Shown piece after piece: positions 20,590-62,580 of a stretch of 64,000 bases of DNA (positions are counted from its first letter, which is position 1; each line of letters begins with the position of its first letter). The notes under the pieces are model-generated. The model ran no database searches and was not told the DNA's origin. It worked only from the letters and a program-made list of their open reading frames with translations. The position numbers and the translations under genes were made by a program. Origin of the DNA: Schmidtea nova (taxonomy: Eukaryota); contig CM097884.1 of assembly GCA_044892505.1 (NCBI GenBank), forward strand, positions 68,696,001 to 68,760,000. The letters run 5' to 3'.

Positions 20590-20593
<4 letters not shown>

Positions 20594-22636: not shown

Positions 22637-22998
22637 CAGAGGTTCCCAAACTTCTTTGGCTCTGGACCCACTTGGAAATATTTTTGACATCTCGGGACCC
22701 ACTGAATAAAATTAAGCATCGAGTACTCAGTAATATCTCATAAATTGGGTTAAAATATTCCGATTTACAGACAGCGTTTAGAAACTTTAGAAATTAGCAC
22801 ATTTAAAACATAAAAATGAAACTTAGGAAAACAGTAAAAAATTTATTCCAATGCAAAAGCAACAGTTTTAACAGTGTTATAACAGTTTAACTAATATTTA
22901 TACTGTCAAGTTTATGTTTTCCTAAAAACTTTCGCAACCCACTTGCCAGAGCTTGGCGACCCACTTTTGGGTCGCGACCCACAGTTTGGGAACCTCTG
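22637..22998. mobile_element. hAT (Buster-type) MITE, 362 bp
   Basis: TIR CAGAGGTTCCCAAAC at both ends. 8-bp TSD ATCTAAAT at 22629-22636 and 22999-23006, with central TA. Confidence 0.95.
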
Positions 22999-34958: not shown

Positions 34959-35310
34959 TTGTATTATATTTGTAAAAATGAATTTTTAAATATTTTCTCA
35001 TCTTTTCTAGATAAGTATTACTCAATAAGATGAATAAATTTGAAATAAAAATATTTGTATTTCCTCATTTTAAAAAACAGAAAATATTTCCGCAAAAAAT
35101 AAACATTTATATATATATATATATATAAACGAGCCTAGACTTTCAAATTTTTTAATATGCTTCTATTTACTAAGTTATGTCATTCACAAACTCGTTAGTG
35201 AGTACTTGATTTGTTTGGAAACTGATTGGGAGCTATTATTCTGCTGGTTCGAACCCGAAATATTCCTGACATTACTGCCTACAGAAATTGGATCCAGTAT
35301 GTGCCAACTT

Positions 35311-40350: not shown

Positions 40351-41424
40351 TGTTGAGGTTCCAAGAATCTCAACTTGATGAACTTATATAAATAAATAAG
40401 TCAAAGACTGGTTCTTTTCTAAACTTTATTTAAATTATAACAATTTACAATTTTGATAAAAATTAAACAATTACCTCACAAAATATATGTATCAATTTCA
40501 ACATATATTTTATATATGTATAGATGCGTGTGTGTGTGTGAATATTTGCAGCTTCCTGAGCTCGGATGTGTAAATAGGTATGCTCAAATTATGTTGTAAT
40601 ATCAATTTATTGAATTTACAACTCTTCTTTAAAGCTTTTGATTTTTGGGTGATTTAACTGAAAAATCAGTCAGTTTATATACTAAATTTTAAGGCACTTA
40701 ATCTGTCAATAATGATTGTTATTTTGCCTCTTGAGTTGATTGAAATTGTTTTTGAAAATAGAGTTGTTTTCAAAACAGAATTGTTTTCAAAATTATTTTT
40801 TAACCTTGAGATATTATTTCATTTTTCTGACCTTGTAGGTCAGAAATATAATTTATTTAAACAAACAGTAATTTATTTATTTTTAATTTATTTAAACAAT
40901 CTGTATTATTTATTTATTTATTTTATTATTATTATTATTTATTGAATTAAAATATTAAAATATAAATGAAAATATAATCCATTTTCCAAATAGTTAAAAA
41001 ATTAATTTACATAAAATATTTTCAACACAAAATATTTTTTCAAAATTATATAAAATTTTGTCCATCACCATAAAAATGTCAATAAATGTTCGCAATATCA
41101 CAAATGATAAATTGTCAAATTTTAAATTGTCATGATGATAAATTGTCATTATAAAAATTAATTTTCAACAATATTTTATTAACAGAAACAAAATAAAATT
41201 ATCCCATAAAAATAAAAATTGCCAGATAGTCATCACATAAAATATTATCATATAAAATCACTAAAATCATAATGTCATTGAATTTGATATTTTCCATTGT
41301 CTATCTATTTTAAAAAAATACATCAACAAATAAAATCAATTATTCATATCATCAATTATCAAAACCAATAAAATAAAAGAAAATGTTATCACAATCAAAT
41401 GTAGTTCATCAAGTCAAATTATTA

Positions 41425-43179
41425 TCATTGTTGGCCTGGGTTCTGATTGTTGTTATCCACATACACATTTAGTCTGTACTTATTTGCCCCTATTGTATAA
41501 TTTTCATCTATCTCAAAATTTTCGACTATCTTCCCTGTATCTAACACTACTCCCTGGGGCGTCAAGGTTATGTCCTCATAACCTTTTTCAACATAATATA
41601 TGTGTATTTCATTCCCATCTACAATCACTGTTGTTTTCTTTACATTGCTATTATATGTGACAGTGATTTCTGGCATGGGTTCTTCTATTGTGATTTGAGG
41701 TTCTGGTCCTAATTCATCTTCTTCCATTGGCTCAATTCCTTCTACTTCCAAATTAGAGTTATCTTCATCTATTGTTATGATTTCAAATGTTGGTTTCTTA
41801 TTTCCGTCCGATGTGGAACAATTTTCTTTAATTGTTTTCTTTGTTATTGTTTTCATTCCATTGTCAGCAGCTTTTTCCCATTCGGTTTCTGTGAGTAAAT
41901 ATAGTAAGCGAACTATTAAGCAAGTTTCACCAACATTAAAAGGTTCTGGTTTTAATAATATATTATTAAGTTTTTTGTTTCTCTTCAGATCATTTGTATT
42001 CTTAATAATCTGAAATGCTAAATTTGATAATTTAATCCTGTCTTCCGGGACATTATTGACGAATGTTTTCATATATTCGGTGTTCGAGAGTTCTCTTACT
42101 CCCATAATATCATCCAGGTCTATTGTGACACTTTTCAGTTTTTTCATAATGTCGAAACCTACTATTATTTTTCCATAGAGGTGTTTCTTGATTTCTAACA
42201 ATGCTATGAATTCGTCCATATTGCCTATACTATTTTCTCTGGTAGCCATTGTGATTTCTGGAAAGAATCTTTGTATTTTTTCTCTTGGGGTAATTTTACT
42301 TTGAAATAGTGTGTCTCCTTTGTAGTTTCTAATACAGACATCTACTGGTCTGTACTCTTTATTAAAATCTTGTACCGCTTTTATGTCTACAAAAGTTATT
42401 TTTCCTTGTCTTTCTTCGGGTGTTAGTGTTTGCTTCGTGAAAGGTATTTTCTTTTCTACGAATATGTTATCCATTCTAATGTCTGACCAAATGGGTTCTA
42501 ATTTTTTAAAGGGATTTTCTATTGTGGGTACATATAATATTTCAATTGCAATTACACATGGCATATTGTGTAATTGTATAATGATATTGTTGAATTCTGT
42601 AGACAATTTACGTTCTCTAAGGGTTTTAAATATTATTGATGTATTGTTTGCAGTCGCTAATACTTTATCGTTGTGTTTTAGTGATATTGTTGTTTTGGTA
42701 GTATGAATTACTATTCTATGGGGAATTTTGATGCCTTCTCTTGCATCTCTATCTGCATTTTGACTTTCTTCAAAACTACCTATAATTTCTTTTAATTTAA
42801 ATCTTCTTGATGAGTTGAATTTTACGATGATCATTTCTCTTTCTTCTATATCTACTTTTAATGCATTTGGTATGCATACCTGATTCGGGAATTTCCTTAG
42901 TGTAATTTCTTCATCATCTGTGTGAATGCTATTTTGAATGATCTTATAAAATGCTGTGTGGTGTTTATATGTGGTGCATGTGGATGTGCATGTGGATATT
43001 GTTGAGCTTGACTGATTGTTTGAGGCTGATTGGTTCATTGGTTGGATTGTTGGTTGATCTATTCTAAAAATAAAATATGACATTATATATTTTATATTAA
43101 TGCAGCTGTAGGACCTACCCTTAGATGCAATATAATATATTGTCAGATATGGGTAAATTTTATAAATTATTGGACACAT
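41425..43179 (-). CDS. Element ORF2 (584 aa): beta-rich N-domain, inactive DEDDh exonuclease-like domain (~41900-42405), acidic linker
   Basis: FVDIKAV..PVDVCIRNYKGDTLFQSKITP..EIT..LYGKIIVGFDI..VRELS..KLSNLA..FNVGET follows the REX4/ISG20 pattern, but the catalytic E, D, H and D appear replaced. Confidence 0.75.
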   Translation of the reverse strand: MCPIIYKIYPYLTIYYIASKGRSYSCINIKYIMSYFIFRIDQPTIQPMNQSASNNQSSSTISTCTSTCTTYKHHTAFYKIIQNSIHTDDEEITLRKFPNQVCIPNALKVDIEEREMIIVKFNSSRRFKLKEIIGSFEESQNADRDAREGIKIPHRIVIHTTKTTISLKHNDKVLATANNTSIIFKTLRERKLSTEFNNIIIQLHNMPCVIAIEILYVPTIENPFKKLEPIWSDIRMDNIFVEKKIPFTKQTLTPEERQGKITFVDIKAVQDFNKEYRPVDVCIRNYKGDTLFQSKITPREKIQRFFPEITMATRENSIGNMDEFIALLEIKKHLYGKIIVGFDIMKKLKSVTIDLDDIMGVRELSNTEYMKTFVNNVPEDRIKLSNLAFQIIKNTNDLKRNKKLNNILLKPEPFNVGETCLIVRLLYLLTETEWEKAADNGMKTITKKTIKENCSTSDGNKKPTFEIITIDEDNSNLEVEGIEPMEEDELGPEPQITIEEPMPEITVTYNSNVKKTTVIVDGNEIHIYYVEKGYEDITLTPQGVVLDTGKIVENFEIDENYTIGANKYRLNVYVDNNNQNPGQQ

Positions 43180-43273: not shown

Positions 43274-46200
43274 TTAACAAAGGGTAGATAGTGTGTACCT
43301 TCCAGGTATATATCTAATGAGAGAACTCCGATAACGCTGCCTCTTCCACTTATATTTTCTATAAGTTTGCGTTCCTATCCACATTGTTATAGTTATTAAT
43401 AATATTATGCTAAAAATTATTACATACATTGGCCATGTTTTATATAAAAGTTTTGGTTGGGGGTGATACAGATTTTGAAATTCTTCCCAGTTATTTATTG
43501 TTATTGCAGGTTTATTTAATGGTATTCTATTTAATATTCTAGGTTTTTCCGTTTGGGATCTTCTCTGCTTTTTCCTTTTGTATATTTTCTGAGATTTTGT
43601 TTTTATTATTTCACATTGGGTCTTTTTCAAATGCCACATTGGTGTTTCTGTACAGAAATAATAATTAGTGTCGGGTTTCAAATTTGTGTATCTGTCGATA
43701 TATTTCTTTTCGTTATTTTTCGTCTTTTGTATAACTTTTGAATTATTAATAAATTTTAAGTATGATTGAATCATTGGGTTCCTATTTAGATTAATAATTG
43801 TGATTTTATCATGTTCTCTTATTATTTTTATATCCTTGTTATTAATTATATTTGCATTAGCTGTATTAAATATAATGAGGGTGATTATTGATATCATTAA
43901 TATACTTTGTGGTTGTGATCTTAAGTTGTATTTATGTGGTTTTATTATTGGTAGTTCGTCTTCTGCAAGTTTGCATCTATTGACGTGCACAACAGTTGGA
44001 TCCTCGTTCTTATTTTTTTGGATATGTAAATTTTCGTTGATCACTTTTATGACTTCGTATGGGCCTTTAAATGGTCGTGCTAGTTTAGTTGTCTTACCCT
44101 TGCCTACTTGTGGTGACATTAATCTAATTTTGTCGCCTATTTTAAAATTATGAGGTTTAGCCGTTTTATCGTATTCATCCTTGTATTGTTCTTGACGAAA
44201 TTTAACTTTTAGATTAGTTATTTTATATACTTCTTGTAATCTTTCTTGCATTAGCGTAACATAATCTGGGGTGTCTAAATATTGTGATATTTTTGGTTCA
44301 AAGACCGTGTCAATTGGCATTATTGGTTCCCTTAAGTACATCAAATAGTATGGTGAATATCCAGTTGTTTCATTTGGTGTGATGTTATGGATATAAGTAC
44401 ATTGGTTTATATATTCATCCCAGTCGTTTTGATTTTTATTTACAAAAACTGATAGTCTATTCAATAATGTACCATTAAATCTTTCTACTAATCCATCTGT
44501 TTGAGGGTGGTATGCTGTTGTATTTATTTTTTGTATATTAAAAATATTAGCTATTCTAGAAATTGTTTCGCTCATAAAATTTCTTCCTTTATCGGTGAGT
44601 AATTTTCTTGGTGTGCCTAACTTAAATATAATTTTTTCCGTTAATAGCTTAGCTACTGTTTCCGCTGTTTCATCTTTTGTTGGAAAAGCTTCTGCCCACT
44701 TTGTGAAATAATCACTAAAAACCAATATGTGTTTATTACCGTTTATTGTAGTGGGTAATTTGCATAAAAAGTCCATGGCACATAGTTCCATAGGAGCTGT
44801 TGTTACAGGTATTGGACGAAGTGGTGCTCTTGTTTTAGTACCTGTATTTCTTCTAGTAGCACATATAGTACATGCTTTACACCACGCTTTAACATCATTT
44901 TTTAAATTTTCCCAGTAGTATTTTTGTAATAGTCTATTTGCTGTTTTTCTGGCTGATAAGTGACCTCCTAGTGTTCCATCATGATATTGTAATAAAAGTA
45001 TTTTTCTTAATTTTTGAGGGACTATAATGAGTTTATTCCCTGTCGTGCTTTCTATTATCAATAAATTTTTATTGATTTTATATTTATGGTTTTTTCCTTT
45101 TTTAATTTCATCTCTTATTTTTGATAAATCAGGATCGTTCATTTGTTCTTCATATATATGTATAGGGTTTTCTGCAACTATTGCGAATACTTCTAGAGCA
45201 CTTAATTCTGGTATACGAGATAATGCATCTGCATTCTTATTTATTCTGCCAGGTTTATAGATAATTTTAATTTGCATATCTTGAATCTTCATTGCCCATT
45301 TTAATAATCTACTTGAAGTATCTTTATGCTTCCATAACCCTTCTAATGGTTTGTGATCGGTTCTTATTATTACTTCTGATCCGTATATATATTGCTTGAA
45401 CTGTTTTAACGCAAACATAATAGCATAACATTCTTTCTCTATCGTCGAATATCTGATTTCAGCATTCTTTAACGTTTTGCTTGCATATGCGATGACGTAG
45501 TCTTTTCCTTTTTCCTCTTCTTGGCCTAAGACTGCTCCTACGGCTTTCCCGCTGGCATCTGTCATAATGATAAATTGTTTAGTAAAATCAGGGTATCTAA
45601 GTATTGGTGCAGTCACTAATTTTTCTTTCAGTTGTTCAAAGGAACTTTGTTGTCTTTGAGTCCACAATTTTTGTGGTTTTTCGTTAATTTTGTTTAATTT
45701 TTGGACTATCAGTGTTTTTCTTCCATCTTCCTTTGTTTTTACTCCTTTTGTTAATTCAATTAATGGAGCTGCTATTTTAGCATAATTTTCGATAAATTTT
45801 CGATAATACCCTGTTAAACCTAAAAATCCTTGTACTTCCTTAACTGATTTTGGTATTGGAAATCGTTGTACTGTTTTTATTTTGTCTGGGTTTGGGATTA
45901 TGCCTTCTACTGAGACAATATGTCCTAAATATAAGGCTGAAGGTTCTGCCCATTTACATTTTGTAGGTTTAATTTTAATTTTTGATTTTCTAAATCTTTC
46001 TAATACATTTTTTATATCTTCTAGATGTTCCTCGAATGTTTTTGATGCTATCAGTACATCATCCATATATACTGCGCAATGTTGTACATCTATCAATATC
46101 GTATTCATTAGCCTTTGAAATGTTGCTGGTGCATTTACCATTCCGAATGGTAGTCTTAAGAATTCGTATAGCTCATTTTCTATCACAAATGCTGATTTTT

Positions 46201-49200
46201 CAATATCTCCTTCTTCTATTTGGATTTGCATATATCCTTTATTAGCATCTATGACCGTAAAATATTTAGCGCCTCTTAGTTTATCGTATTGTTCTTGTGC
46301 CTTTGGAAATGGATATGAGTCTTTTGTTGTTACTTCGTTTAATTTTCTATAATCGATACACATTCTAATTTCGCCATCTTTCTTTCTAACTGGTACTATT
46401 GGTGAAGCCCACTGTGAGAAACTTTGTCTAATTACTCCTGCCCCTTTTAGTTCATTTATTTGTCTCTTTATTTCTTCTCGAAGTTTATATGGTGTTACAT
46501 AGGGTCGTTGTTTTATTGGTCTAGCGTTCCCTGTATCAATTACATGTTTAATGATATCCGTGTCTCCTAGATCAAATTCGTGCTTTGCAAAAACATCATT
46601 ATATTTATCAATTAATATCTGCAATAATTTTTGTTGAACCTTGTCCAGATAATCGTTATTTATTGTAGTCTTTTCGTAAAATTTAATGTCATTCGGTTTA
46701 ATTGTATCTTCAAGGTTGTTACTTTCTATACTTATCTCGCCAATATCGTATTTATATTTTGATAATTGACCTAATTTTGTACCTTTATGAATTTTTATTT
46801 TTCTGTTTTCGAAATTGGCAATTCGAATTGGGATTATACCCTTTTTGGGTATTACACATTCGTCCGTTAGCATTATATTTCTATTTTCTGTAATCGTTGT
46901 GTTGGGTTCGAAAATAAATATGTCATCACTTTGAATATTAACTTTTATAGGTATAATATTATCACTTTCATATTCTAGTTCAAATTCTTCTATCGCGCTT
47001 ACTTCTATCGGCTTTTTATAACTTTTGTTTATCTTTCTTTTTATTTTGTTATCTGACAAATCTATTACATGATTCTTTAATTTTTTCAGAATATCTATGC
47101 CTAGAATACATTTCCTTTGACATATATCTGCTACTCGGAACACATGATCTATGGTCTGATTTTCAAAGTATACTGTAAGTTTTACGTTTCCTTTAATAGG
47201 TATAGTGTGTGAAGAAAGTGACAATAATTCATCATTTGTTGATGTGATATTTTGAAGTTGTTTTTCTGTTAGTAGATCTTCTTCTATCAATGATGCAGCG
47301 GCACCGGTATCTACTAGCGCATTTAGTATTTGATTGTTTATCGTTATTTGGGTTCTTGGCCTCATGTCGTTCGCTTCTTCTCTTTCTTCTAGTCCATAAC
47401 ATCCGTATACTTTCTTTGGTTTTCTTATCAGCGTGTGGGTGTTATAATCTTTTAGAGGTATATTAGTTTCGATCTCATTGCCTAGATTTCTTAATTGATC
47501 CATGTGTATAATATATGGTCCTCCTTGCGTTGGTTCCGTGTGATCGAATTCTTCCGTATGATTATTTTCTTGATTGGTATTGTCATCTATTAGTCTTTCT
47601 TCTGTTGTCTTTCTTATTATTCTTTTGATATCTTTATCATGTTTTGCAGTTATTAAATATTTTGCAATAAATGGACATAAACAAGCTAGCATTTTGTATG
47701 AATTGCCAAATACTTGTCTCAGCTGTCTTAATGATACTAGTGATGAACATATCATTTTTAGTAGTGCAATAGAATAATAGATGCCGAGTATGGTTGAGAA
47801 GGTATTTCCTAGGATTGCAAAGTATCCCCATATACTATATAGAACTCGATAAACTACCTTCTTGAAGTGTTCTTTTGATAACAAGATGTCGAAATTGTAT
47901 TGTCCATCGTGGCTATTCTCGATAACTTTGCTTGCTATTATTGTTAGTACTTTCTCCTTTTCGTTCGGAAATAATAAATGTTTTCTTGCACTTTCTATGT
48001 CTTCCTTTGTATAAAGTCCATTGTTATCAAAATCATTTACTTCTATGAATTCTAGTTTCTTATCTAGTTCTGTCATTTCTAGATTTAGTGGTCTTATTGC
48101 TACCTTCTTATCTGACATCGTTATCCATGTTTCGTCATCTAATTTATATAGAGGGTCTAATAAGTTTGTACATTTATCTATTCTCTTAGGTATGTAGTTT
48201 TTATCTGTTAGTATCCTTGTTATGGGTTGTAAGTAGACTTTCTCTCCCTTATAAATAACTGGTAATTCGTTTGTACATTGTTTGTTCGTAGCTAATGATA
48301 CACTGACTGGTTTACATTGAAATGTTTGGATTACTTCGCCGACAACTCTAGCAAATGCGCCTCTTTCTGAAAAGAGCATTGGGGCCATTAGATCCGGATT
48401 TGTAATTGCTAATGCCATTTTCGTTCTTAAAATTTCTCGGTTAAGCTTACAATCATTTATTATTGTTTCTTGATATACCCTATCTAATTGCATTAATTGA
48501 TGGTGATAAAAATAGTCGATCTTATTATTGAAATATGATGAAAGTTTAATATCGTATTTGTTTACTTTTATTTTCGCATCTTTTATTTCATCTTTACTCA
48601 AATATAGACCTTTATAATTGGTTTGTATTATTGACTTTCCACATTTTATAATTTCCCCTTTACTAACAAATCTCAATGCTTCTCCTGAAGATTCTGTCAT
48701 ATATATTGTGGGTGTATCTTTTTCTTGGATTACAATTGTCTTTCGTTTTCTATCTCTTACTTTAGTTGATTCTGTATTTGTAAACTGTTTGCCTTTAATT
48801 GCTGTAAATTTTAGCGACTTCAATATTGTTAGAGGACAATCGTATGGATCAACTTTATATATTACTATTGATTCACCAGTGTCACAACTTACTTCTTTTG
48901 ATGTACAGAAAGGGTGTGTCATCATTTTTTGTGTTATGCTGTCAAATGATGCTTTAAACTGTCTAAGTTCGACAATGTATTCTCGTCTTACAACGGCGTT
49001 TTTTATAATGTGTCCCCATATTCTATATTCCCCACCTTGACAATATCCTCCCTGTGAAGACCATCCAATTACATCTACTCGTTGTTTTACTCGTGCACCT
49101 ACCTGTGCTTTTAGTTCGATTTCATGTATTTTTATCTTCTTTGATTGAAATGCATTTTCACACTCTTGTGGTGTTATTATAACTGTGTCTGGTGTAAATG

Positions 49201-52012
49201 ACGGTCGGAGTATCGTCCTTGCTATATTATTACATACAAAGACTTCTTCAGAATATTTTATTACACATTCTTTTGCTTCTGTATGTATAAAATCAGATTC
49301 TTGATAAACATAAAATATTTTAGGTTCTGTGGTACTTAAAGTGGTTGGATTAGCTTCTGGGCAATTTTCTACATCTAATAGTGAATATTTTTGTCCCCAT
49401 TTTGGATTCTGACAATCATAAGCGATCATACCTGTACTACTCTTTATTAAGTTAAGTAATATTGTTATCATCATTATTATAATAGGTATTGATAATCCAT
49501 GATTACTTTTTCCTGATTTCATCAATGTTTTATTTATTATTTTCTTTAATCGTCTTTCAACTTTTTTTTCTTGGGTATCTATTTCTATGGTAGGTGTCTC
49601 TATCGGCACTGTTTTATCGTATAAGATTTGCCACCCACCTTTAGACTGTATCCATGGTATCACTTCGGGTTTAAATTTTATTAATATTTGTTCGGCTACT
49701 CGATGTACTTGTTTCTCCGCATTTTTTATCAATACATATTCTGATCTATAAATGAGGTATGCCAATGCTGTTACTACTCTATCCCGATTGATTCCTGTTC
49801 TGAATAATATTTTCAAGACAACTTTTTCATTAACATCTTCAGTCACTAAGTTTTTTATATCTGTTGTAATTAGTTTAATTCGATTCCCTATGTTATCTGC
49901 TAAAGATGATATGTTTGCGTTGGAATATAATCTTGGGTATACAGTTTTAATCAAATCTATAATTATATCTGTATCTTCACTATTTGTTGACATTTCGCTT
50001 GCAATCTCTCTCAATTTTTCCGCCATCCGTTTACTGGTAAACTTATTTGTTATTTCTGACTCTTGTGACTCATCTCCATCTTGTTTTATCGTTTCAAAAT
50101 CCTCTGCTTCATATGTTACATCGTTTTTCTGACTCGCATCTGATATAGATATTCTTCTATCATTAGCAATCCATTCATCTAGCATTGATTCTAATCCCAC
50201 TTTAACTGATACGGTTATTATATTGTTATCAATTGAATTTATCCCATAGTCCATTAAAAAATCTTCACTTTGCATCTTTATTCCGTAAAAGTATAATACT
50301 ATTTCATCATTGATTCCTATTTCGCTGTACCAATTTGCTCTGGCTATTTGTTTTATCTTTTTCACTTTTGTACAAGTATGTACCCCTTGTTTATGAATGA
50401 TGATTTTAGGTGTATCTCCATTTTTTGTTTCTAATGTAATTTCCAAGGGTTCATGTAACTTCTCATTTTTTCGAACAAATTCACTATAACATCTCAACAT
50501 CTCTTTTATCTCAATTTCTAATTCAAACAACTTTGTTTCCTTTTGTCTTTGAGCCAATAGCGGTATCAAGTTTCTCAGATTCTCAAGATTTATCCCCTCT
50601 ACATGAATTTTATTTAATATTCTCAATACTTCATTATCATCTATAGGGTACTTTTTTAAAGATTCGTCCAATTCTTGCTTTAAAATATTATGTCTATCTA
50701 TCTCTGCTAGTAATTCTTCATCTCTTTCTCTTTGTTCTCTTAATTCATCATTATCCATCTTAACTTCATTAGTAAAAGTTTTAAACTCATTAATCAATAC
50801 ATTAATTTTATTCCTTTCAATTAGTCTCTCATATTTTGTCTTAAATTCTTGTAATTCATCCCTCAGCATCTCGATTTCATTATTGGGTTCTTTAACCTCC
50901 ATACCATTTATTTGTTTCACCTCTGGCTCCTTTTTAAACTGCACTCTGTTTGGTGATTCAACTCGTATATTTCTACATGCTTTTGCCATATGACCATACT
51001 TTTGACAATTAAAACATTTTATTTCACCTCGAAAATTAATTTTGTCTCTTCCATCATTATTAAATGGGCTAGGTCTTCTATCTCGATTATACATTTGTTG
51101 ATTTGGACTTGGTCGTCTACCTCTAAGATTATCTCTATTTGACCCAAAATTATATCTATTATCATCATATCTATTTCGATCAGAACTGTTCCTTGTATTA
51201 AAGTTATCCCTATAGTTCCGATTATCATTAAAACGACTATTTTTATTATATCGATTATTATCAAAATAATTATCCCTATTATAGTTTAAACGTCTCTCAT
51301 TATCTTTATTATATTCAAAGTAATTATTTTTATCATTTCTGGTAAATTCTACATAATTGTCATTTCGACTATTCGGTCTACCCCTTGGGCTATTTGACCT
51401 CTTATTATTTTCTGGTGATTGATTTCGACTTGCATTTGGACTCATCCTTTTTCTATTTTTAACAAAATTCAAATATAACTGCTTCATCTCTTCCCATGGA
51501 ATATTATCATCTTTATCAGTTACCTCAGATTTCCCTATTTTACTCTCTAATTCTACTGCATCAATTGTTGCGTTAGATCTATCTCTTTGAATTGCTTCAA
51601 TTCTTCGAGCTTTCTGAACTAGTTCGTTTAAATCTTCATATTCGACCATTATTAATGCCTTGTATAAATATTTTTGAATTCCACTCCAAAATTGATCCTC
51701 TATTAATTTCGCAGTATGTTCTCCTACTCCAAAAGCTTTTCGAGCTAACTCGGTCAAATTATACACATATTCTCCAATTGTTTCTCTGCTACCTTGGTAT
51801 CTATTTCTAAATTTTTGTACATTAATTTTCTGCAAATCTCGCTCAATTACAATTTCACCTCTTAAATTGTTGACTAAGTCTTCCCAATTTCTACCCTTAC
51901 ATTCTAAATTATTATATGCCTGCAATGCATAACCCTTTAAATATAATGGAATTCGTCTTTTTAACTCATCTTGTGTCCACCCACAAGCCTCTGCGTATTG
52001 TGCAATTTCATC
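43274..52012 (-). CDS. Single polyprotein Gag-Bcl2-like-Env-PR-RT-RH-IN-FN3-like/TM
   Basis: The frame stays open upstream of the listed TTG start (IAQYAEACGWTQDELKRRIPLYLKGYA). Zinc knuckle CFNCQKYGHMAKAC 50975-51016; protease LVDTGAAASLI ~47305; RT YMDD ~46060; RNase H TDAS ~45555; integrase HHCC + DDE core ~44450-44985; GPY ~44085. No stop or frameshift in 8.7 kb. Confidence 0.95.
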   Translation of the reverse strand, partial: DEIAQYAEACGWTQDELKRRIPLYLKGYALQAYNNLECKGRNWEDLVNNLRGEIVIERDLQKINVQKFRNRYQGSRETIGEYVYNLTELARKAFGVGEHTAKLIEDQFWSGIQKYLYKALIMVEYEDLNELVQKARRIEAIQRDRSNATIDAVELESKIGKSEVTDKDDNIPWEEMKQLYLNFVKNRKRMSPNASRNQSPENNKRSNSPRGRPNSRNDNYVEFTRNDKNNYFEYNKDNERRLNYNRDNYFDNNRYNKNSRFNDNRNYRDNFNTRNSSDRNRYDDNRYNFGSNRDNLRGRRPSPNQQMYNRDRRPSPFNNDGRDKINFRGEIKCFNCQKYGHMAKACRNIRVESPNRVQFKKEPEVKQINGMEVKEPNNEIEMLRDELQEFKTKYERLIERNKINVLINEFKTFTNEVKMDNDELREQRERDEELLAEIDRHNILKQELDESLKKYPIDDNEVLRILNKIHVEGINLENLRNLIPLLAQRQKETKLFELEIEIKEMLRCYSEFVRKNEKLHEPLEITLETKNGDTPKIIIHKQGVHTCTKVKKIKQIARANWYSEIGINDEIVLYFYGIKMQSEDFLMDYGINSIDNNIITVSVKVGLESMLDEWIANDRRISISDASQKNDVTYEAEDFETIKQDGDESQESEITNKFTSKRMAEKLREIASEMSTNSEDTDIIIDLIKTVYPRLYSNANISSLADNIGNRIKLITTDIKNLVTEDVNEKVVLKILFRTGINRDRVVTALAYLIYRSEYVLIKNAEKQVHRVAEQILIKFKPEVIPWIQSKGGWQILYDKTVPIETPTIEIDTQEKKVERRLKKIINKTLMKSGKSNHGLSIPIIIMMITILLNLIKSSTGMIAYDCQNPKWGQKYSLLDVENCPEANPTTLSTTEPKIFYVYQESDFIHTEAKECVIKYSEEVFVCNNIARTILRPSFTPDTVIITPQECENAFQSKKIKIHEIELKAQVGARVKQRVDVIGWSSQGGYCQGGEYRIWGHIIKNAVVRREYIVELRQFKASFDSITQKMMTHPFCTSKEVSCDTGESIVIYKVDPYDCPLTILKSLKFTAIKGKQFTNTESTKVRDRKRKTIVIQEKDTPTIYMTESSGEALRFVSKGEIIKCGKSIIQTNYKGLYLSKDEIKDAKIKVNKYDIKLSSYFNNKIDYFYHHQLMQLDRVYQETIINDCKLNREILRTKMALAITNPDLMAPMLFSERGAFARVVGEVIQTFQCKPVSVSLATNKQCTNELPVIYKGEKVYLQPITRILTDKNYIPKRIDKCTNLLDPLYKLDDETWITMSDKKVAIRPLNLEMTELDKKLEFIEVNDFDNNGLYTKEDIESARKHLLFPNEKEKVLTIIASKVIENSHDGQYNFDILLSKEHFKKVVYRVLYSIWGYFAILGNTFSTILGIYYSIALLKMICSSLVSLRQLRQVFGNSYKMLACLCPFIAKYLITAKHDKDIKRIIRKTTEERLIDDNTNQENNHTEEFDHTEPTQGGPYIIHMDQLRNLGNEIETNIPLKDYNTHTLIRKPKKVYGCYGLEEREEANDMRPRTQITINNQILNALVDTGAAASLIEEDLLTEKQLQNITSTNDELLSLSSHTIPIKGNVKLTVYFENQTIDHVFRVADICQRKCILGIDILKKLKNHVIDLSDNKIKRKINKSYKKPIEVSAIEEFELEYESDNIIPIKVNIQSDDIFIFEPNTTITENRNIMLTDECVIPKKGIIPIRIANFENRKIKIHKGTKLGQLSKYKYDIGEISIESNNLEDTIKPNDIKFYEKTTINNDYLDKVQQKLLQILIDKYNDVFAKHEFDLGDTDIIKHVIDTGNARPIKQRPYVTPYKLREEIKRQINELKGAGVIRQSFSQWASPIVPVRKKDGEIRMCIDYRKLNEVTTKDSYPFPKAQEQYDKLRGAKYFTVIDANKGYMQIQIEEGDIEKSAFVIENELYEFLRLPFGMVNAPATFQRLMNTILIDVQHCAVYMDDVLIASKTFEEHLEDIKNVLERFRKSKIKIKPTKCKWAEPSALYLGHIVSVEGIIPNPDKIKTVQRFPIPKSVKEVQGFLGLTGYYRKFIENYAKIAAPLIELTKGVKTKEDGRKTLIVQKLNKINEKPQKLWTQRQQSSFEQLKEKLVTAPILRYPDFTKQFIIMTDASGKAVGAVLGQEEEKGKDYVIAYASKTLKNAEIRYSTIEKECYAIMFALKQFKQYIYGSEVIIRTDHKPLEGLWKHKDTSSRLLKWAMKIQDMQIKIIYKPGRINKNADALSRIPELSALEVFAIVAENPIHIYEEQMNDPDLSKIRDEIKKGKNHKYKINKNLLIIESTTGNKLIIVPQKLRKILLLQYHDGTLGGHLSARKTANRLLQKYYWENLKNDVKAWCKACTICATRRNTGTKTRAPLRPIPVTTAPMELCAMDFLCKLPTTINGNKHILVFSDYFTKWAEAFPTKDETAETVAKLLTEKIIFKLGTPRKLLTDKGRNFMSETISRIANIFNIQKINTTAYHPQTDGLVERFNGTLLNRLSVFVNKNQNDWDEYINQCTYIHNITPNETTGYSPYYLMYLREPIMPIDTVFEPKISQYLDTPDYVTLMQERLQEVYKITNLKVKFRQEQYKDEYDKTAKPHNFKIGDKIRLMSPQVGKGKTTKLARPFKGPYEVIKVINENLHIQKNKNEDPTVVHVNRCKLAEDELPIIKPHKYNLRSQPQSILMISIITLIIFNTANANIINNKDIKIIREHDKITIINLNRNPMIQSYLKFINNSKVIQKTKNNEKKYIDRYTNLKPDTNYYFCTETPMWHLKKTQCEIIKTKSQKIYKRKKQRRSQTEKPRILNRIPLNKPAITINNWEEFQNLYHPQPKLLYKTWPMYVIIFSIILLITITMWIGTQTYRKYKWKRQRYRSSLIRYIPGRYTLSTLC
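47650..49500 (-). other. Chuvirus-type (class III, gB-related) envelope glycoprotein domain
   Basis: Signal-like IPIIIMMITILLNLIKSSTG, then AYDC..YSLLDVENC, YDCPL, CG..I..TNY.GLYL, DCKLNR, GAFARVVGE..CKPV, CTNELPV.Y..YLQPITRIL, then a hydrophobic anchor VLYSIWGYFAILG..IYYSIALLKMIC. Confidence 0.8.
49615..50035 (-). other. Bcl-2 family domain within the polyprotein
   Basis: BH3-like MAEKLREIASEM, BH1-like LFRTGINRDRVVTALAY and BH2-like VIPWIQSKGGWQIL, in the correct order and with plausible spacing. Confidence 0.8.
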
Positions 52013-54322
52013 ATTTTCTAGCGGGATAGTTGTTATTCTCGGAATTAAAACTTTTATTATAAAAATTATGTCGAAAATATTATAAATGAAATAAATATAT
52101 TAATTTATTTTAAAAAATTGATTGTTAAAATTTGAAAATGTCTAACACTAAGAGTTTGATTATTTTTACTTTTATTTGTTCTTTCGTTTAATTATTCAAA
52201 GTCATTCTTAAAAAGATTCTAGGGCTGTAACCTATTTTAAAAGTAGTCTTGGATTATTGTGCTCCCAAGTTGTTGGTATGTAAAATATACCATTTCACTG
52301 GTATCAATATCGAGGAGTTGTTTGAAATGCACTACGATATGGTGCTTTGGGCTGGAGTCAAATGAGTCGAAAACTGCATTCTAGCACCAATGGATGTTCT
52401 TGCTGTCATGATTTTAAACGACAGCAATCGGTTCATCTTTGGTAGCTGAAATGAGAAAGTCACACTATTCTGATATTTACAATACCAAATACATTAATTT
52501 GCGGAAGAATATCAAGATGATGCCGAAGAAGATTTGATTTAAATCAAAATTTACTTTAAAATTTCGTGGTTTTTATTGATGTTTCTTTTTGTTAATATTT
52601 TTGTGAATTTTCATTGACGCTTGGTAATTTTGAGAGTCATTCGTGTTTATTTATTGTCTTGTTGTTTGTCAATCCTTTTTATGATTTTTTTGTGTATTGA
52701 TCTTTTTTATAGAATTTTTATAAGTTGGAATTTGTTTTTGCAGATCAGTTATTTATGTGATTTGTAAAATTTCTATTGTTTTGCAAAAACTTTAGAAAAA
52801 TTAATAAATTTCAAAGATTTTTAAAAAGGTTTTAAAATTGAAATAAATATATATAATTTTTATTTTATGTCACTGGTTATGCAATGAAAATATTATATAA
52901 TTGAGTACTTAATTATAAAATATTATATAATTCTGAAATATTGCGTTAATTTTGTAACCTCCTAGAAATATAGGGAGACTAATTGTAATTGATAGAGTTT
53001 ATGGATAAATGACTTGTACCAGAGTGTTCACTTCTCCCTACTGATCAAATCAATAATAAATTCTAGTGTTCTTTTTTTCAGTGTAGTCATCAAGCTAAAA
53101 CATGAGGAAATTTAGCAGGTGGCGTTTTTTTGCGGAATGATAAAATTGCCAAAATTTTAACAGTATACGTTGATCCAATATTCAAAAACCAAAATTAGAA
53201 CATATTGTTATGGTTTGCATGAACAGGCACGAAATAAAATAAAACTTACAAAAATATACGCAAAAAATATAAAAGCCTGTAAATTTAAAAAATAATATTA
53301 AAATACAAAAATTAATTAGAAATTTGAAAATTTTGAAAGTAAAGATTTAGCGGGGAAACTAGTATAGGAGGATGAGACGAATTAAAATACGGTAAGATGA
53401 AATTAAAAAGGGCCCCGAAAAAATAGGAAAAAACAAATTAATTAAAGGAATTAATTATTCAATGGAAAACCCGAGTGATGTGAGGAACCCTAGCCATCAG
53501 CAAATATATCTAATTATCAAGAAAATCAGATGAGTAGAGGGAGTTCGGGCGAACAATCACAAACCCAATCAAAAACCCAATCACAAACCCAATCACAAAC
53601 AATCACAAACCCAATCACAAACCCAATTACGAAATTGGAAATCCCGCAGTAAAAAAGGAAGTCACTATAAAAACCCAGACAAATGGCTCAAATCGCCAAT
53701 TGGTCGAAGCATGAAAATTTAATTCCAAAATTAGCTATAGTTTTCAAAGAGAAGTTTTAAAGTTAAAAAAGGTTAGAATTTGTGTCGAATCAATTTTTGC
53801 GTACCAGAAAAGAATCTCCAACATGAAGACCTACCCCTAACGCAAGAACAGTGTAGAAAATTCTGTTTTTGTAATTTTGAAGCCAAATTTGAAAATAAAA
53901 ATTTTTGTGTTGGGTTTTGGTTAATTCGTTTATACAGAAAGGACACAGGGAGTCAGACAGTAATCGACTATTAAATAATAACCCAACAATATTTACTAAT
54001 GTAAAGTTTTTGTTTCAAAAATTAAATTTTATTTATGTTAAACTTTATTTCTTAGACTTTTTATAGCCAAAATAGTGAGAAACTTATCCCAGGATGAATA
54101 ATGTAAAAATTAATTCAGTTTGTGAATAATATAACTTGGTAAATAGAAGCATATTAAAAATTATGAAAGCCTAAATGTTTATTTTTTGCGGAAATATTTT
54201 CTGTTTTTTAAAATGAGGAAATACAAATATTTTTATTTCAAATTTATTCATCTTATTGAGTAATAATTATCTAGAAATGATGAGAAAATATTTAAAAATT
54301 CATTTTTACAAATATAATACAA

Positions 54323-56718
54323 ATGGAATATTCAAATACCTACTACTACAGTTTAGTCGATAATTCAAGATTTAATATGTATAAATCGCTGGCCAATGAA
54401 AATCGTCGAATAATCAATGACAATTTTAATCAAACAGCAAACACCAAAAAATCCAAAAAATACGAATGTGAAGTAAGAATATTCAACGAAATTGTAACCC
54501 GATACGAATTCGATGTATGTTATTTTTATTATTGTTTTATATATTATTAATTATTTATTATCCAGAGAAATTACACCGGATCGAATTTGGTATCAAAAAT
54601 CTGTCAAGATTTAAACATCGTAGAGAAAAACTTTTTTGGCTTGCAATACCTGTCTAAATTACATGGAAATAAAGTTAGAATTTTTATCAATAATTTATAA
54701 GTAATATTTAAAACATTATTTTTAGCGTTGGCTCAAACCCGATGAAAATATCGTCAAAGCAATGAGTAAGTGTCATCTAGAAAAAGGCTTTTGATTAATT
54801 ATTATAATTTTCACCTATTTCTAGAAGGAGTAAACAATATTGTATTTATTTTCATGTTTCAATATTATCCCTCCAATTTAATCTATGTGGAAGATTACAT
54901 GACAATCTATTATTTGATCGAACAACTTAAGAATGACATTCGAAATCAAAAGTGAGTTCAATCAATAAATAATAATAATAATAATAATAATAAATCTATT
55001 TTAGAATAAAATGCTCTATCAATGAATCAATAAAATTATCGGCAATTTTATTCTTTTCACAATACGGCAGTTATGATCGCGAGCAATTCAAATCGATACA
55101 TTTTGGTAGGGATAATTTAATTTGCCCGGAAATAATGAATAAGAAAGAAACAAGAAATGAATTTATTCATGAATATAAACAAATACAGTAAGAATTTATT
55201 TTATTGGGATATTATTTCAGTTTTATTTATCAAATTAATTTTTCTTTTAAGATCATTGACATTTTTGCAAGCCGATCTTTTATTTATTGATAAAGCACTC
55301 AACTATCCGGGATACGGAGAAGAACGATATCATGCAAAAGTAGGGAAAATTTTCAAATTTTTTCTCTAATTTTCAATTTTATTTTTAGTCACTGAAATCG
55401 CAAGATATTTTCATTGGAATATCTCCGAAAGGAATAACAGTCTATCACCCGAATCCAGAAGCGTTTTCATGGAAAAGTTACATCAATTGCTATGAAATGC
55501 TGGGAAATCTCACAATTTTATATTCGGACAAGATCGGAAAGAAACAATCCACAATGTTGCGAACATATGATAATGGATTTCTAATAGAACTGTTCAAACG
55601 GAACGAATATGCATATCGGTAATCAAATATTGTTTTTATTAATATTCCATTGATTGTTCCCATTTTATTAGAATGCTTCACAAGAAAACCTACAATATAA
55701 ATATCACTCCAACTAAACAAATGATAAATGTAAGTAAAATCTTAATTTTTCACTATTGATATATACAATTTTTTATCGAATACTTTTCTTTTTGTGAGAC
55801 TACCTTAATTCGTGCTAAATATGAAACACAATATTAACTGGTAGCCTGAGAGAATTGGGAGCAATATTGAAACATACAAAAAAATTAAGAATATGAAAAC
55901 TTTTTAATTGGATATTTTAATGATTTTTTTTGTTTTTTATTTAGGAATCTGAATATTCATCGGAAAAACCACCAATTCCAAAAAGACATAATTTTGTTTT
56001 AAGTGCAGAAAAAGAGAATGAAATTTTCACCAATGAAATGCAATCTCCGATTGCTTCAGAAACTTCATCCAATGAGTGCGATGAGAGAAATCAGTTGAGC
56101 GATCAAAACACAGATGACTCATGGTATCACAGTGATAACAGCGTATCTAGTAAGAAATCAACGAAAGCACTTGTTTGTGATCAATATGTTATGAAAGGAA
56201 ATCGCACTTCCGAACCCAGCGCCAGTTCACAATATTCATCAGATGAATCGATTAAAACCTTAGAGGAAAACGAAGTTCAGAATTCAGCCAATCACAAAGA
56301 AAGTTGTTCCGAAAATCGATGCCTCCTCAGTTTCATGGATAATATCAAATCGGGAAATTCTAGTGTCACGGGAAATATTGATTTACTTTCAGAACTAAAT
56401 GGCGGCGAAGATCTGGAATTAATTAAAAAAGGACAATGGACAAATCTTTTCGATGAAGTTTACCAATACATGGATTATTATGAGCTGCAACATGACGGCG
56501 ATTGCAACAATGAAACATTGAAACAGAATTCATTGCAAATTACCGAAGAAACGCCGAAAGAAATAAATGATTCGGAAAAGAAATACAATTCAACATCGAA
56601 ATTGGAAGATCAAACTTTTCATGAATCTTTCAATCCGAATAAATTGTCAACAAAAACTAAAAAGAAAAAAGGATTTTTGTGGAAATTGATCAAAAGTTTG
56701 AATAACTATTTCCGGTAA
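54323..56718 (+). CDS. FERM (band 4.1) domain gene, copy C
   Basis: Same exon structure as copy B with only scattered substitutions (e.g. EVYQY vs EVYRY). Confidence 0.9.
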
Positions 56719-57319
56719 TTGGGAAAATTAATCATTTACATTCATGGAGGATTTTTATATTTCTGATTGAATAATTGATAAATGTTTGCTGTGGTATTTA
56801 TTTGGCTTTCATTCAAGTCAAACTTATAAAATATCCCGATTAATAATGTTGTGCTAATATAGTTTCGGTAGGAACACATTTTATTCTGACTCCTTGTGTT
56901 CTTTGAAAATCAATGAAATCCAACAAAAAAAATGTTTATTTATTAAGAACACATTTCCACAACGTTAATACACTTCGATTTTTGCTTTGGCTAAACTATC
57001 CGAAGGACGTTACCCATGAAATCTGATAGAGACGATATTCATTTTTAATCACTGACGATTCTCCTTAATTTTCTTAAATTCTTAAATTTCTTACTCAAAA
57101 TATTTTTAAATATTTCTCCTCAGACCAATTGGTAATTTTATTGAGATGAATTGGTTTATATACCACTCTCAATCCCATCAATCACTCTGGAGAAGCATGA
57201 AATCCAACTCTTCACACTAATTTTAAAATTTGAAATTTTCTTTGTTAGTGGCGCTCTGATAAATAGTTTTCCGGCTTGTCAGATCTGCCACTTTACCTCC
57301 TTTCCACAATGATTGGTGA

Positions 57320-58933: not shown

Positions 58934-58935
58934 TA

Positions 58936-61589: not shown

Positions 61590-61982
61590 NNNNNNNNNNN
61601 NNNNNNNNNNNNNNNNNNNNNNNNNNNNNNNNNNNNNNNNNNNNNNNNNNNNNNNNNNNNNNNNNNNNNNNNNNNNNNNNNNNNNNNNNNNNNNNNNNNN
61701 NNNNNNNNNNNNNNNNNNNNNNNNNNNNNNNNNNNNNNNNNNNNNNNNNNNNNNNNNNNNNNNNNNNNNNNNNNNNNNNNNNNNNNNNNNNNNNNNNNNN
61801 NNNNNNNNNNNNNNNNNNNNNNNNNNNNNNNNNNNNNNNNNNNNNNNNNNNNNNNNNNNNNNNNNNNNNNNNNNNNNNNNNNNNNNNNNNNNNNNNNNNN
61901 NNNNNNNNNNNNNNNNNNNNNNNNNNNNNNNNNNNNNNNNNNNNNNNNNNNNNNNNNNNNNNNNNNNNNNNNNNNNNNNNNN
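61590..61982. other. Assembly gap (393 N)
   Basis: Run of N. Confidence 1.

Positions 61983-62580
<598 letters not shown>

What the first reader, a model, noticed from the sequence alone, without database searches (positions are those of the whole stretch)
49432..50035. Bcl-2-like domain fused to Gag, with the Env signal peptide as a possible tail anchor
BH3-, BH1- and BH2-like motifs occur in order (LREIASEM; FRTGINRDRVV, cf. FxDGxNWGRIV; WIQSKGGW). Viral Bcl-2 mimics are established in large DNA viruses, but I know of none in a retrotransposon polyprotein. The hydrophobic segment ~40 residues after BH2 is placed like the Bcl-2 C-terminal membrane anchor and also precedes the glycoprotein, so one segment may both anchor Gag-Bcl2 and translocate Env. 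The NWGR motif is altered to NRDR, so BH3 binding may be changed.
Basis: partly seen in the sequence, partly recalled or inferred. Interest (0 to 1): 0.9.

Follow-up and report, generated by a model that had tools for sequence, protein, structure and literature searches.

The report
Bcl-2-like domain in retroelement polyprotein
A virus-like jumping gene in this AT-rich animal genome carries, between its capsid and envelope parts, a diverged copy of a cell-death-regulator (Bcl-2) domain; this is real but the same layout is already published for the giant 'Burro' retroelements of planarian flatworms.

Summary
The three motifs are present, in order, on the minus strand. They lie inside one uninterrupted 2883-codon ORF (43274-51925) that encodes Gag(CCHC) - coiled coil - ubiquitin-like - Bcl-2-like - hydrophobic segment - class III fusion glycoprotein - PR-RT-RNaseH-IN - two further membrane spans.

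The BH1-BH2 half is more than chance. Pfam Bcl-2 gives E 5e-6 to 1e-5, but 26.5-27.5 bits against a cut-off of 31.4. The best PDB matches are all Bcl-xL/Bcl-2, best E 3e-4, in an ungapped 68-residue alignment. The 'BH3' motif has no tool support. Two single-sequence AlphaFold runs failed (pLDDT 40-43), so the fold is unconfirmed.

The hydrophobic segment is the glycoprotein's own signal peptide. It is kept in four related polyproteins that show no Bcl-2 signal. The tail-anchor idea is therefore plausible topology, not a demonstrated adaptation.

The novelty claim fails. Arkhipova & Yushenova 2019 (PMC6431247, citing Jurka 2007 and Grohme 2018) describe planarian Burro elements with SUMO-like, then BCL2-like, then in-frame env, then PR.

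Verdict: a compact Burro-like member of a known kind. Interest is moderate to low. Function is still untested anywhere.

The parts
43274..51925 (-). Single 2883-codon polyprotein ORF (stop codon included): Gag - accessory region - Env - Pol - C-terminal membrane part
   Evidence: From its own base composition 248 stops would be expected by chance. Pfam domains.
50936..51925 (-). Gag-like region (aa 1-330) with one CCHC zinc knuckle (aa 302-318, 50975-51016). There is no ATG in about the first 90 codons.
   Evidence: zf-CCHC E 5.3e-5. BLASTP to the N-terminal parts of P0002-P0004. ATG check. The first ~75 aa of the relatives have no counterpart upstream.
50201..50413 (-). Ubiquitin-like candidate domain (aa ~505-575)
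   Evidence: Conserved block in the alignment with P0002-P0004. The aligned part of P0004 has a weak Pfam ubiquitin hit, E 0.018. The window's own segment has no Pfam or PDB hit. A SUMO-like domain sits at this position in Burro (PMC6431247).
49610..50077 (-). Bcl-2-like all-helical domain (aa 617-772), eight predicted helices
   Evidence: Secondary structure from two AlphaFold runs. The top 50 Foldseek hits are nearly all Bcl-2 family, but not significant.
49631..49819 (-). BH1-BH2 core (aa 703-765), containing FRTGINRDRVV (49772-49804) and WIQSKGGW (49631-49654)
   Evidence: Pfam PF00452 positions 37-100/100, E 4.8e-6 to 9.5e-6, 26.5-27.5 bits, cut-off 31.4. Bcl-xL E 3.3e-4. Ungapped alignment.
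49991..50014 (-).
   Evidence: Present. No support from Pfam or PDB searches of the N-terminal half. It lies at the end of the first predicted helix.
49433..49501 (-). Hydrophobic segment (aa 809-831): internal signal peptide / signal-anchor of Env, and possible C-terminal anchor of the upstream product
   Evidence: Hydropathy. The PF24664 match starts at profile position 4 at aa 815. Same position, with basic residues before and small residues after, in P0002-P0005.
47735..49429 (-). Env: Monjiviricetes-type (class III, gB/chuvirus-like) fusion glycoprotein ectodomain plus membrane span (aa 833-1397)
   Evidence: PF24664 E 1.4e-79. 38-39 % identity to P0002-P0005. TM at aa 1379-1397. 14 Cys and no N-x-S/T sequons.
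43970..47365 (-). Pol: protease, RT, RNase H, integrase (aa 1521-2652), Ty3/gypsy type, all profiles covered end to end
   Evidence: RVP, RVT_1 1-205/205, RT_RNaseH 1-104/105, Integrase_H2C2 1-58/59, rve 2-102/102. The PR-RT linker resembles foamy-virus Pol.
43277..43969 (-). C-terminal extension after integrase, with two membrane-span-like segments (aa 2675-2693 and 2833-2851)
   Evidence: Hydropathy. The same arrangement, but no sequence similarity, in P0002-P0005.
41425..43179 (-). Downstream ORF2, 584 aa, unknown
   Evidence: No Pfam hit. No similarity to the relatives.
52013..57107 (-). Upstream copy of the ~5-kb direct repeat, in the 5' LTR position
   Evidence: 99.4-99.9 % identical to 35311-40351. 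The ends are not canonical.
35311..40351 (-). Downstream copy of the ~5-kb direct repeat, in the 3' LTR position
31962..35192 (+). Third, partial copy of the repeat in inverted orientation. It also matches 213 nt beyond the upstream copy.

Best explanation
The interval is the accessory region of a Ty3/gypsy (Metaviridae) envelope-carrying retroelement of the GAG-ENV-POL type. The whole element is written as one polyprotein. It has the same module order as the planarian Burro elements: ubiquitin/SUMO-like, then Bcl-2-like, then in-frame class III env, then PR. The ~150-residue helical domain is most likely a captured and strongly diverged Bcl-2-family domain. How it probably works is inferred, not shown. 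During translation Gag and the accessory domains stay in the cytosol. The hydrophobic segment at aa 809-831, which is the glycoprotein's own signal peptide, inserts into the ER membrane with its basic N-side in the cytosol and starts translocation of Env. Signal peptidase would cut 2-3 residues before the conserved A-Y-D-C. The upstream Gag-UBL-Bcl-2-like product would then be held on the cytosolic face by a C-terminal span, the same topology as cellular tail-anchored Bcl-2 proteins, but at the ER and reached co-translationally. The Env membrane span returns PR-RT-IN to the cytosol. The Bcl-2-like domain would then act on the host's Bcl-2-regulated death pathway in cells that express the element. 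The tether would also keep Gag next to Env.
For: One open frame of 2883 codons where 248 stops are expected by chance. Pfam domain order zf-CCHC, Bcl-2, Monjiviricetes_fusion, RVP, RVT_1, RNase H, integrase. The Bcl-2 profile hit has E 4.8e-6 to 9.5e-6 with three query bounds. PDB phmmer's best 60 sequences are all Bcl-xL/Bcl-2, best E 3.3e-4, ungapped over 68 residues with about 20 identities that include both signature motifs. Eight helices are predicted, with BH1 at a helix-loop-helix junction and BH2 spanning the last two helices. The PF24664 match begins in the hydrophobic segment. That segment, with basic residues before it and small residues after it, is conserved in position in four related polyproteins. 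Independent literature reports a BCL2-like motif between a SUMO-like domain and an in-frame mononegavirus-like env in Burro elements (PMC6431247). GAG-ENV-POL elements with gB-type Env are reported in Platyhelminthes, Bryozoa and Nematoda (PMC13524379).
Against: The Pfam score is below the curated cut-off (27.5 against 31.4 bits). The N-terminal half, including the proposed BH3, matches nothing. Both AlphaFold models are low-confidence (pLDDT 39.7 and 42.5), and the Foldseek matches have TM about 0.2 and E 0.2-2. No relative of the domain was found among 1.84 billion representative proteins or in three word-index searches. The four nearest polyproteins show no Bcl-2 signal. Two of the four BH1 tetrad residues are changed. 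Cleavage sites, membrane insertion and any effect on cell death are all inferred. I could not compare with an actual Burro sequence.
Confidence: 0.7

Rival explanations
1. This is a true Bcl-2-family descendant, but it no longer acts, or never acted, on apoptosis. It may serve as a structural or membrane-proximal spacer that holds Gag at the ER beside Env. It may use the pore-former-like helical bundle for membrane remodelling. Or it may be a decaying passenger kept only because it lies inside an essential open frame.
For: The BH1 tetrad has lost its Trp and Gly. There is no detectable BH3. The nearest relatives do without the domain while keeping the UBL-like block and the signal peptide, so the domain is dispensable for this type of element. 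The interval between the zinc knuckle and Env varies from 362 to 824 residues among relatives.
Against: Burro elements carry several death- and ubiquitin-related modules together (BIR, MATH/TRAF, SUMO-like, BCL2-like; PMC6431247). That points to deliberate meddling with these host pathways. The most conserved Bcl-2 signature positions are exactly the ones retained here.
Confidence: 0.2
2. There is no homology. This is an unrelated helical linker domain whose resemblance to BH1 and BH2 is a chance or convergent match in an I/K/N-rich protein.
For: The score is below Pfam's gathering threshold. Only 63 of 100 profile positions match. The fold was not recovered by AlphaFold. No homologues were found in very large protein libraries.
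Against: The E-values of about 5e-6 are stable to query bounds and survive correction for the ~20 proteins scanned. All 60 best PDB sequences belong to one family. Both signature motifs are in register without a gap. The same motif is reported at the same place in Burro polyproteins by independent methods (PMC6431247).
Confidence: 0.1

Closest known systems
Burro / GYPSM1 giant gypsy-like LTR retroelements of planarians (Schmidtea mediterranea, Dugesia tigrina): Jurka 2007; Grohme et al. 2018; Arkhipova & Yushenova 2019, PMC6431247
   Same: One huge ORF beginning with Gag and CCHC knuckles. A SUMO/ubiquitin-like module is followed by a BCL2-like motif. Env with mononegavirus-type glycoprotein similarity lies in frame between BCL2 and PR, and PR-RT-RH-IN follow. 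The terminal repeats are very long and the host genome is AT-rich and full of transposons.
   Different: The ORF here is 2883 aa, not 4873-5140 aa. No MATH/TRAF, BIR, ankyrin or dUTPase-like hits were found. It has one zinc knuckle, not two or three. No Burro sequence was at hand, so sequence relatedness and host identity are untested.
GAG-ENV-POL errantivirus-like Ty3/gypsy elements with HSV-gB-type (class III) Env in Platyhelminthes, Bryozoa and Nematoda (PMC13524379)
   Same: Same gene order, same class of fusogen and Ty3/gypsy Pol. The Env ectodomain is bounded by a signal peptide and a membrane span.
   Different: That paper does not mention Bcl-2 or ubiquitin-like modules (0 occurrences). 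Here all parts are one reading frame, and a further membrane part follows the integrase.
Cellular Bcl-2 family, best matched by Bcl-xL (PDB chains)
   Same: BH1 and BH2 are in register over 68 ungapped residues. The domain is all-helical and of the right size. A hydrophobic span follows 44 residues after BH2.
   Different: It is embedded in a polyprotein. There is no detectable BH3 or BH4. W and G of the BH1 tetrad are replaced. The membrane span is a co-translational signal peptide of the next protein, so the expected site is the ER rather than the mitochondrial outer membrane.
Bcl-2 homologues of large DNA viruses (herpes-, irido-, pox- and asfarviruses)
   Same: The concept is the same: a mobile genetic parasite carrying a host-derived death regulator.
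   Different: There was no significant match to viral Bcl-2 models in BFVD; a few appear among noise at E 1.4-4.4. Those are separate genes of DNA viruses, not a domain of a retroelement polyprotein.
Polyprotein viruses in which an internal signal peptide stays as the anchor of the preceding protein (flavivirus anchored capsid, hepacivirus core); from established knowledge, not tested here
   Same: Same topological logic for the proposed Gag-Bcl-2-like anchor.
   Different: Those are RNA viruses with unrelated proteins. Processing in this element is not demonstrated.

Membership tests
Bcl-2 family (Pfam PF00452) | Profile score at or above the curated gathering threshold (31.4 bits) | tested here: not met
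   26.5, 27.1 and 27.5 bits; E 9.5e-6 to 4.8e-6; profile positions 37-100 only.
Bcl-2 family (Pfam PF00452) | BH1 and BH2 signature motifs in the right order and spacing | tested here: met
   Ungapped 68-residue alignment to Bcl-xL with both motifs in register. N and R of the BH1 tetrad are kept; W and G are replaced.
Bcl-2 family (Pfam PF00452) | BH3 motif in helix 2 | tested here: inconclusive
   The N-terminal half hits no Bcl-2 protein or profile. The proposed motif sits in the first predicted helix, 63-70 residues before BH1.
Bcl-2 family (Pfam PF00452) | Compact eight-helix bundle around a central hydrophobic hairpin | tested here: inconclusive
   Eight helices are predicted, but pLDDT is 39.7 and 42.5. 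Foldseek's best hits are Bcl-2 family at E 0.2-2 and TM about 0.2.
Bcl-2 family (Pfam PF00452) | C-terminal membrane anchor | tested here: inconclusive
   A hydrophobic segment starts 44 residues after BH2. It is the Env signal peptide, shared with relatives that lack the domain. Cleavage is not shown.
Bcl-2 family (Pfam PF00452) | Binding of BH3 ligands / control of the death pathway | not testable with these tools
   No computation here addresses it.
Burro-like planarian gypsy elements | Env in frame between gag and pol within one polyprotein | tested here: met
   compared with PMC6431247.
Burro-like planarian gypsy elements | SUMO/ubiquitin-like module followed by a BCL2-like motif directly upstream of env | tested here: met
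   BCL2-like. The UBL is only weakly supported.
Burro-like planarian gypsy elements | Extra modules: MATH/TRAF, BIR, ankyrin, dUTPase-like | tested here: not met
   No such Pfam hits at E up to 1 across the whole ORF. The PR-RT linker matches foamy-virus Pol, not dUTPase.
Burro-like planarian gypsy elements | Sequence similarity to GYPSM1/Burro-1 to -4; planarian host | not tested
   No Burro sequence or host genome was available. The source of the window is not given.
Ty3/gypsy envelope-carrying LTR retroelement (errantivirus-like, GAG-ENV-POL) | PR-RT-RNase H-IN order with Ty3/gypsy-type profiles, CCHC Gag, and a viral fusogen | tested here: met
   Relatives share 44 % identity in Pol and 38-39 % in Env.
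Ty3/gypsy envelope-carrying LTR retroelement (errantivirus-like, GAG-ENV-POL) | Canonical LTRs (TG..CA), target-site duplication, PBS and PPT | tested here: inconclusive
   Near-identical 5-kb direct repeats are in the right places, but none of the terminal signatures is present.
Bcl-2 homologues of large DNA viruses | Closer similarity to viral than to cellular Bcl-2 proteins | tested here: not met
   BFVD search: nothing below E 0.5, with viral Bcl-2 entries scattered among noise. The best sequence matches are cellular Bcl-xL.

The most novel reading that the evidence does not exclude
The glycoprotein's signal peptide has been co-opted as the tail anchor of a retroelement-encoded Bcl-2 homologue. 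One translation event would then yield an ER-anchored Gag-UBL-Bcl-2 product that restrains host cell death beside nascent Env. This compact element would be a minimal, tractable form of the Burro accessory module. None of the papers read here proposes this topology.
Probability: 0.3. Interest if true: 0.65.

Novelty: new member of a known kind. Interest (0 to 1): 0.35.

Why it matters
A death-regulator domain inside a retroelement polyprotein shows that reverse-transcribing elements, like large DNA viruses, capture host apoptosis machinery. That point is already in print for planarian Burro elements, so this locus does not open a new category. Its value is practical. It is a much shorter polyprotein with no internal stops that keeps only the ubiquitin-like, Bcl-2-like and Env modules. 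This makes it a cleaner object for structural and expression studies of a feature that has been noted three times but never characterised. The signal-peptide/tail-anchor reading gives a concrete, checkable prediction about processing.

Tried and rejected
- Plus-strand reading of the interval gave only stops.
- A search of 1.84 billion representative proteins with aa 600-810 returned one hit, a 555-aa tandem-repeat protein matched in seven weak stretches. I judged it spurious.
- Word-index searches with the domain, both inside the full-length query and alone at E up to 10, found nothing.
- AlphaFold was run on a single sequence with two different bounds. Both models were poor. Foldseek on them is therefore only suggestive.
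- Alignment A1 (the window fragment against four full-length relatives) scattered the short query along the long sequences, so I discarded it.
- No deeper alignment could be built, so no alignment-based structure prediction was possible.
- Local BLASTP/phmmer of the domain against P0002-P0005 found nothing significant. A MAFFT alignment hints at a degenerate BH2-like stretch in P0004, but I do not rely on it.
- The LTR hypothesis for the 5-kb repeats remains unresolved. I looked for TG..CA ends, a target-site duplication, a PBS and a PPT and found none.
- Exact-sequence look-ups of eight window ORFs to identify the source all failed.
- tRNA and Rfam scans of the window found nothing.
- The other gypsy-like remnant in the window has only Pol similarity, with no Env or Bcl-2-like part.
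- Grohme et al. 2018 could not be opened by DOI, so its statement is cited through PMC6431247.

Full report
**What is at the coordinates**

The interval 49432-50035 makes no sense on the + strand. On the minus strand it is residues 631-831 of a single ORF of 2883 codons, 43274-51925. With the base composition of that strand, about 248 stop codons would be expected in a frame of this length, and none is present. The frame is therefore maintained.

The three quoted motifs are there, in order:
- LREIASEM: aa 638-645, window 49991-50014.
- FRTGINRDRVV: aa 708-718, window 49772-49804.
- WIQSKGGW: aa 758-765, window 49631-49654.

A hydrophobic segment at aa 809-831 starts 44 residues after the last motif.

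**Architecture of the polyprotein**

Pfam scans of six consecutive pieces give the following order:
- a CCHC zinc knuckle (aa 302-318);
- a Bcl-2 match (aa 703-765);
- a Monjiviricetes-type viral fusion glycoprotein (PF24664, E 1.4e-79), whose match begins at profile position 4 at aa 815, inside the hydrophobic segment;
- a retroviral protease, RT, RNase H, and the integrase zinc and core domains, all covered end to end and all of Ty3/gypsy type.

Hydropathy adds the Env membrane span (aa 1379-1397) and two further spans after the integrase (aa 2675-2693 and 2833-2851). The stretch between PR and RT resembles the foamy-virus Pol linker, not a dUTPase. A 584-aa ORF of unknown nature follows downstream at 41425-43179.

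**Is the Bcl-2 likeness more than chance?**

For the BH1-BH2 half, yes.
- The Pfam Bcl-2 model is the top hit with three different query bounds (E 9.5e-6, 6.2e-6 and 4.8e-6). It always matches profile positions 37-100.
- The score of 26.5-27.5 bits is below Pfam's gathering cut-off of 31.4, so this is not a certified family member.
- phmmer against all PDB sequences returns Bcl-xL first (E 0.0028 with the 191-aa query, E 3.3e-4 with the 86-aa core). The 60 best distinct sequences are all Bcl-xL or Bcl-2, with Bax further down.
- The alignment to Bcl-xL runs 68 residues without a gap, with about 20 identities that include both signature motifs. Of the BH1 tetrad, the Asn and the final Arg are kept, while Trp is Arg and Gly is Asp.

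For the N-terminal half, no. On its own it matches no Bcl-2 protein or profile. The proposed BH3 lies at the end of the first predicted helix, 63-70 residues before BH1. By general knowledge of the family, that is not where BH3 sits (helix 2, closer to BH1). I treat the BH3 assignment as unsupported.

**Fold**

Two single-sequence AlphaFold runs (aa 615-800 and aa 617-772) gave pLDDT 39.7 and 42.5. Both predict eight helices. BH1 falls at a helix-loop-helix junction and BH2 across the last two helices, but the models are not compact.

Foldseek against the PDB lists almost only Bcl-2-family chains in the top 50, aligned over about 150 columns. However, E is 0.2-2 and TM about 0.2. This repeats the sequence signal and is not a test of the fold. 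Against predicted viral structures nothing stands out.

No deeper alignment could be made, for three reasons:
- The domain has no detectable relative among 1.84 billion representative proteins. The single hit is a repeat protein matched in seven weak stretches, which I judge spurious.
- The word-index searches found nothing.
- An attempt to align the fragment to full-length relatives misplaced it and was discarded. The consensus line that tool printed was not used.

**Relatives**

A search with the Env part found four polyproteins of 2627-3771 aa from metagenomes (P0002-P0005), with 38-39 % identity in Env and about 44 % in Pol. They share the plan: zinc knuckle, variable interval, hydrophobic segment, A-Y/F-D-C, Env, membrane span, PR-RT-RH-IN, two late membrane spans.

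None has a Pfam Bcl-2 hit at E up to 0.1, and none is significantly similar to the window's domain. The interval from zinc knuckle to Env is 362-824 residues in them and 531 here.

A block upstream of the Bcl-2-like domain (window aa ~505-575) is conserved in three of the four. In P0004 it carries a weak ubiquitin hit (E 0.018).

The hydrophobic segment is present in all. It has basic residues before it and small residues 2-3 positions before A-Y-D-C. It is therefore the glycoprotein's signal peptide and predates the Bcl-2-like insert.

They are virus-like elements, probably of animals, and fetching such sequence by look-up is barred.

**How it most likely works (inferred)**

- The cytosolic Gag-UBL-Bcl-2-like part is followed by an internal signal peptide that starts Env translocation.
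- Cleavage by signal peptidase on the luminal side would leave the upstream product with a C-terminal membrane span. This is the topology of tail-anchored Bcl-2 proteins, but it would be reached co-translationally and at the ER.
- The Env span then returns the chain to the cytosol for PR-RT-IN.
- This is the same logic as the anchored capsid of polyprotein RNA viruses (established knowledge).
- Whether the domain blocks cell death, merely tethers Gag next to Env, or is a passenger cannot be told from sequence. The loss of two BH1 tetrad residues, and the fact that relatives do without the domain, leave the last two readings open.

**Comparison with what is known**

Arkhipova & Yushenova 2019 (PMC6431247) summarise Jurka 2007 and Grohme et al. 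2018 and add their own HHpred analysis. According to that paper, the giant gypsy-like Burro/GYPSM1 elements of the planarians Schmidtea mediterranea and Dugesia tigrina have:
- one ORF1 polyprotein of 4873-5140 aa, starting with Gag and CCHC knuckles;
- MATH/TRAF, BIR and ankyrin modules;
- a SUMO-like module placed just before a BCL2-like motif;
- env, with hits to mononegavirus fusion glycoproteins, in frame between BCL2 and PR.

The authors already suggest meddling with host apoptosis and ubiquitination. Burro1 is transcribed and is under PIWI control in planarian tissues (PMC8532177). GAG-ENV-POL elements with class III Env are also catalogued in Platyhelminthes, Bryozoa and Nematoda (PMC13524379), without mention of Bcl-2.

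The window's element has the same UBL, Bcl-2-like, Env, PR order in a much shorter ORF. It shows no MATH, BIR, ankyrin or dUTPase signal. Its 30 % G+C, transposon-rich setting would fit a planarian, but the source is not known to me and no Burro sequence was at hand. Membership by sequence is therefore untested. It may even be one of the named Burro families.

None of the three papers read here on Burro or GAG-ENV-POL elements (PMC6431247 section 7 in full; PMC13524379 and PMC8532177 by term search) mentions the signal-peptide/tail-anchor reading. Two full-text searches for a Bcl-2 homologue in retroelements turned up no other report.

**State of the element**

- Polyprotein ORF: no internal stops and no detectable frameshifts. 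All Pol profiles are complete.
- gag: one peculiarity or defect at its 5' end. There is no ATG in about the first 90 codons, and the first ~75 residues seen in relatives have no counterpart upstream. I do not speculate on how a start is supplied.
- Flanks: the internal 11.7 kb is flanked by direct repeats of 5.0-5.1 kb that are 99.4-99.9 % identical (35311-40351 and 52013-57107). They lie where LTRs would be.
- These repeats lack TG..CA ends, a target-site duplication, a purine tract and a primer-binding site. The gag frame runs out of the upstream repeat.
- A third, partial, inverted copy (31962-~35192) also matches 213 nt beyond the upstream repeat.
- Possible readings are very long non-canonical LTRs, a tandem arrangement with a truncated neighbour, a segmental duplication, or an assembly problem. 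All remain open.

None was entered into a tool, a script, a note or this report, and none is used as evidence. Every comparison cited here comes from tool output.

**Verdict**

The Bcl-2 likeness of the BH1-BH2 half is statistically sound but sub-threshold and structurally unconfirmed. The BH3 call is unsupported. The anchor idea is a reasonable topological inference. The feature belongs to a kind already described in planarian retroelements.

Noticed in passing
window 47735-49429 (minus strand; Env ectodomain aa 833-1375): The 'glycoprotein' ectodomain has no N-x-S/T sequon in 543 residues, although Asn is 7.4 % of the polyprotein and the cytosolic first 808 residues have seven. It has 14 cysteines. 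Roughly five sequons would be expected by chance.
   Followed up: partly
window 43277-43969 (minus strand; aa 2653-2883): After the integrase the same ORF continues with a signal-like span, about 140 residues, and a second span near the C-terminus. The four relatives have the same arrangement but no sequence similarity. Two of them also carry a second aspartic-protease-like domain there.
   Followed up: partly
window 50201-50413 (minus strand; aa ~505-575): A ubiquitin-like candidate block is conserved with relatives just upstream of the Bcl-2-like domain. A weak Pfam ubiquitin hit appears only in P0004 (E 0.018). This matches the SUMO-like module reported at this place in Burro.
   Followed up: partly
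window 41425-43179 (minus strand): A 584-aa ORF lies directly downstream of the polyprotein. It starts with ATG, has no Pfam hit, shows no similarity to the relatives, and is not in the exact-sequence protein collection.
   Followed up: partly
window 35311-40351, 52013-57107 and 31962-35192: There are three copies of a ~5-kb non-coding repeat: two direct copies flanking the element and one inverted, partial copy. Their ends are not LTR-like. Each copy carries the same 226-aa ORF antisense to the element, with no Pfam hit. A 12-nt tandem array at 53552-53633 differs in copy number between copies.
   Followed up: partly
window ~19600-24100 (minus strand): A second, unrelated gypsy-like remnant is present, with protease, RT, RNase H and integrase similarity only (25-39 % identity to the main element). 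Its pol is split into several pieces by stops and/or frameshifts. It has no Env or Bcl-2-like part.
   Followed up: partly
window 58930-59697 (minus strand); 57497-58719 and 27043-28365: There is a mariner-type transposase fragment (PF01359, E 1.9e-13). Next to it, a 1.2-kb sequence recurs in inverted orientation at 77-78 % identity on the other side of the element.
   Followed up: no
window 61590-61982 and 61983-62480: A run of 393 N (gap or mask, left untouched) is followed by short tandem repeats of roughly 114-245 nt. A 405-aa ORF spans this stretch and is not to be trusted.
   Followed up: no
P0005: One related polyprotein is deposited as a hypothetical protein of a Flavobacteriaceae metagenome-assembled genome. 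A Ty3/gypsy Env-Pol polyprotein there is almost certainly eukaryotic contamination of the bin.
   Followed up: no
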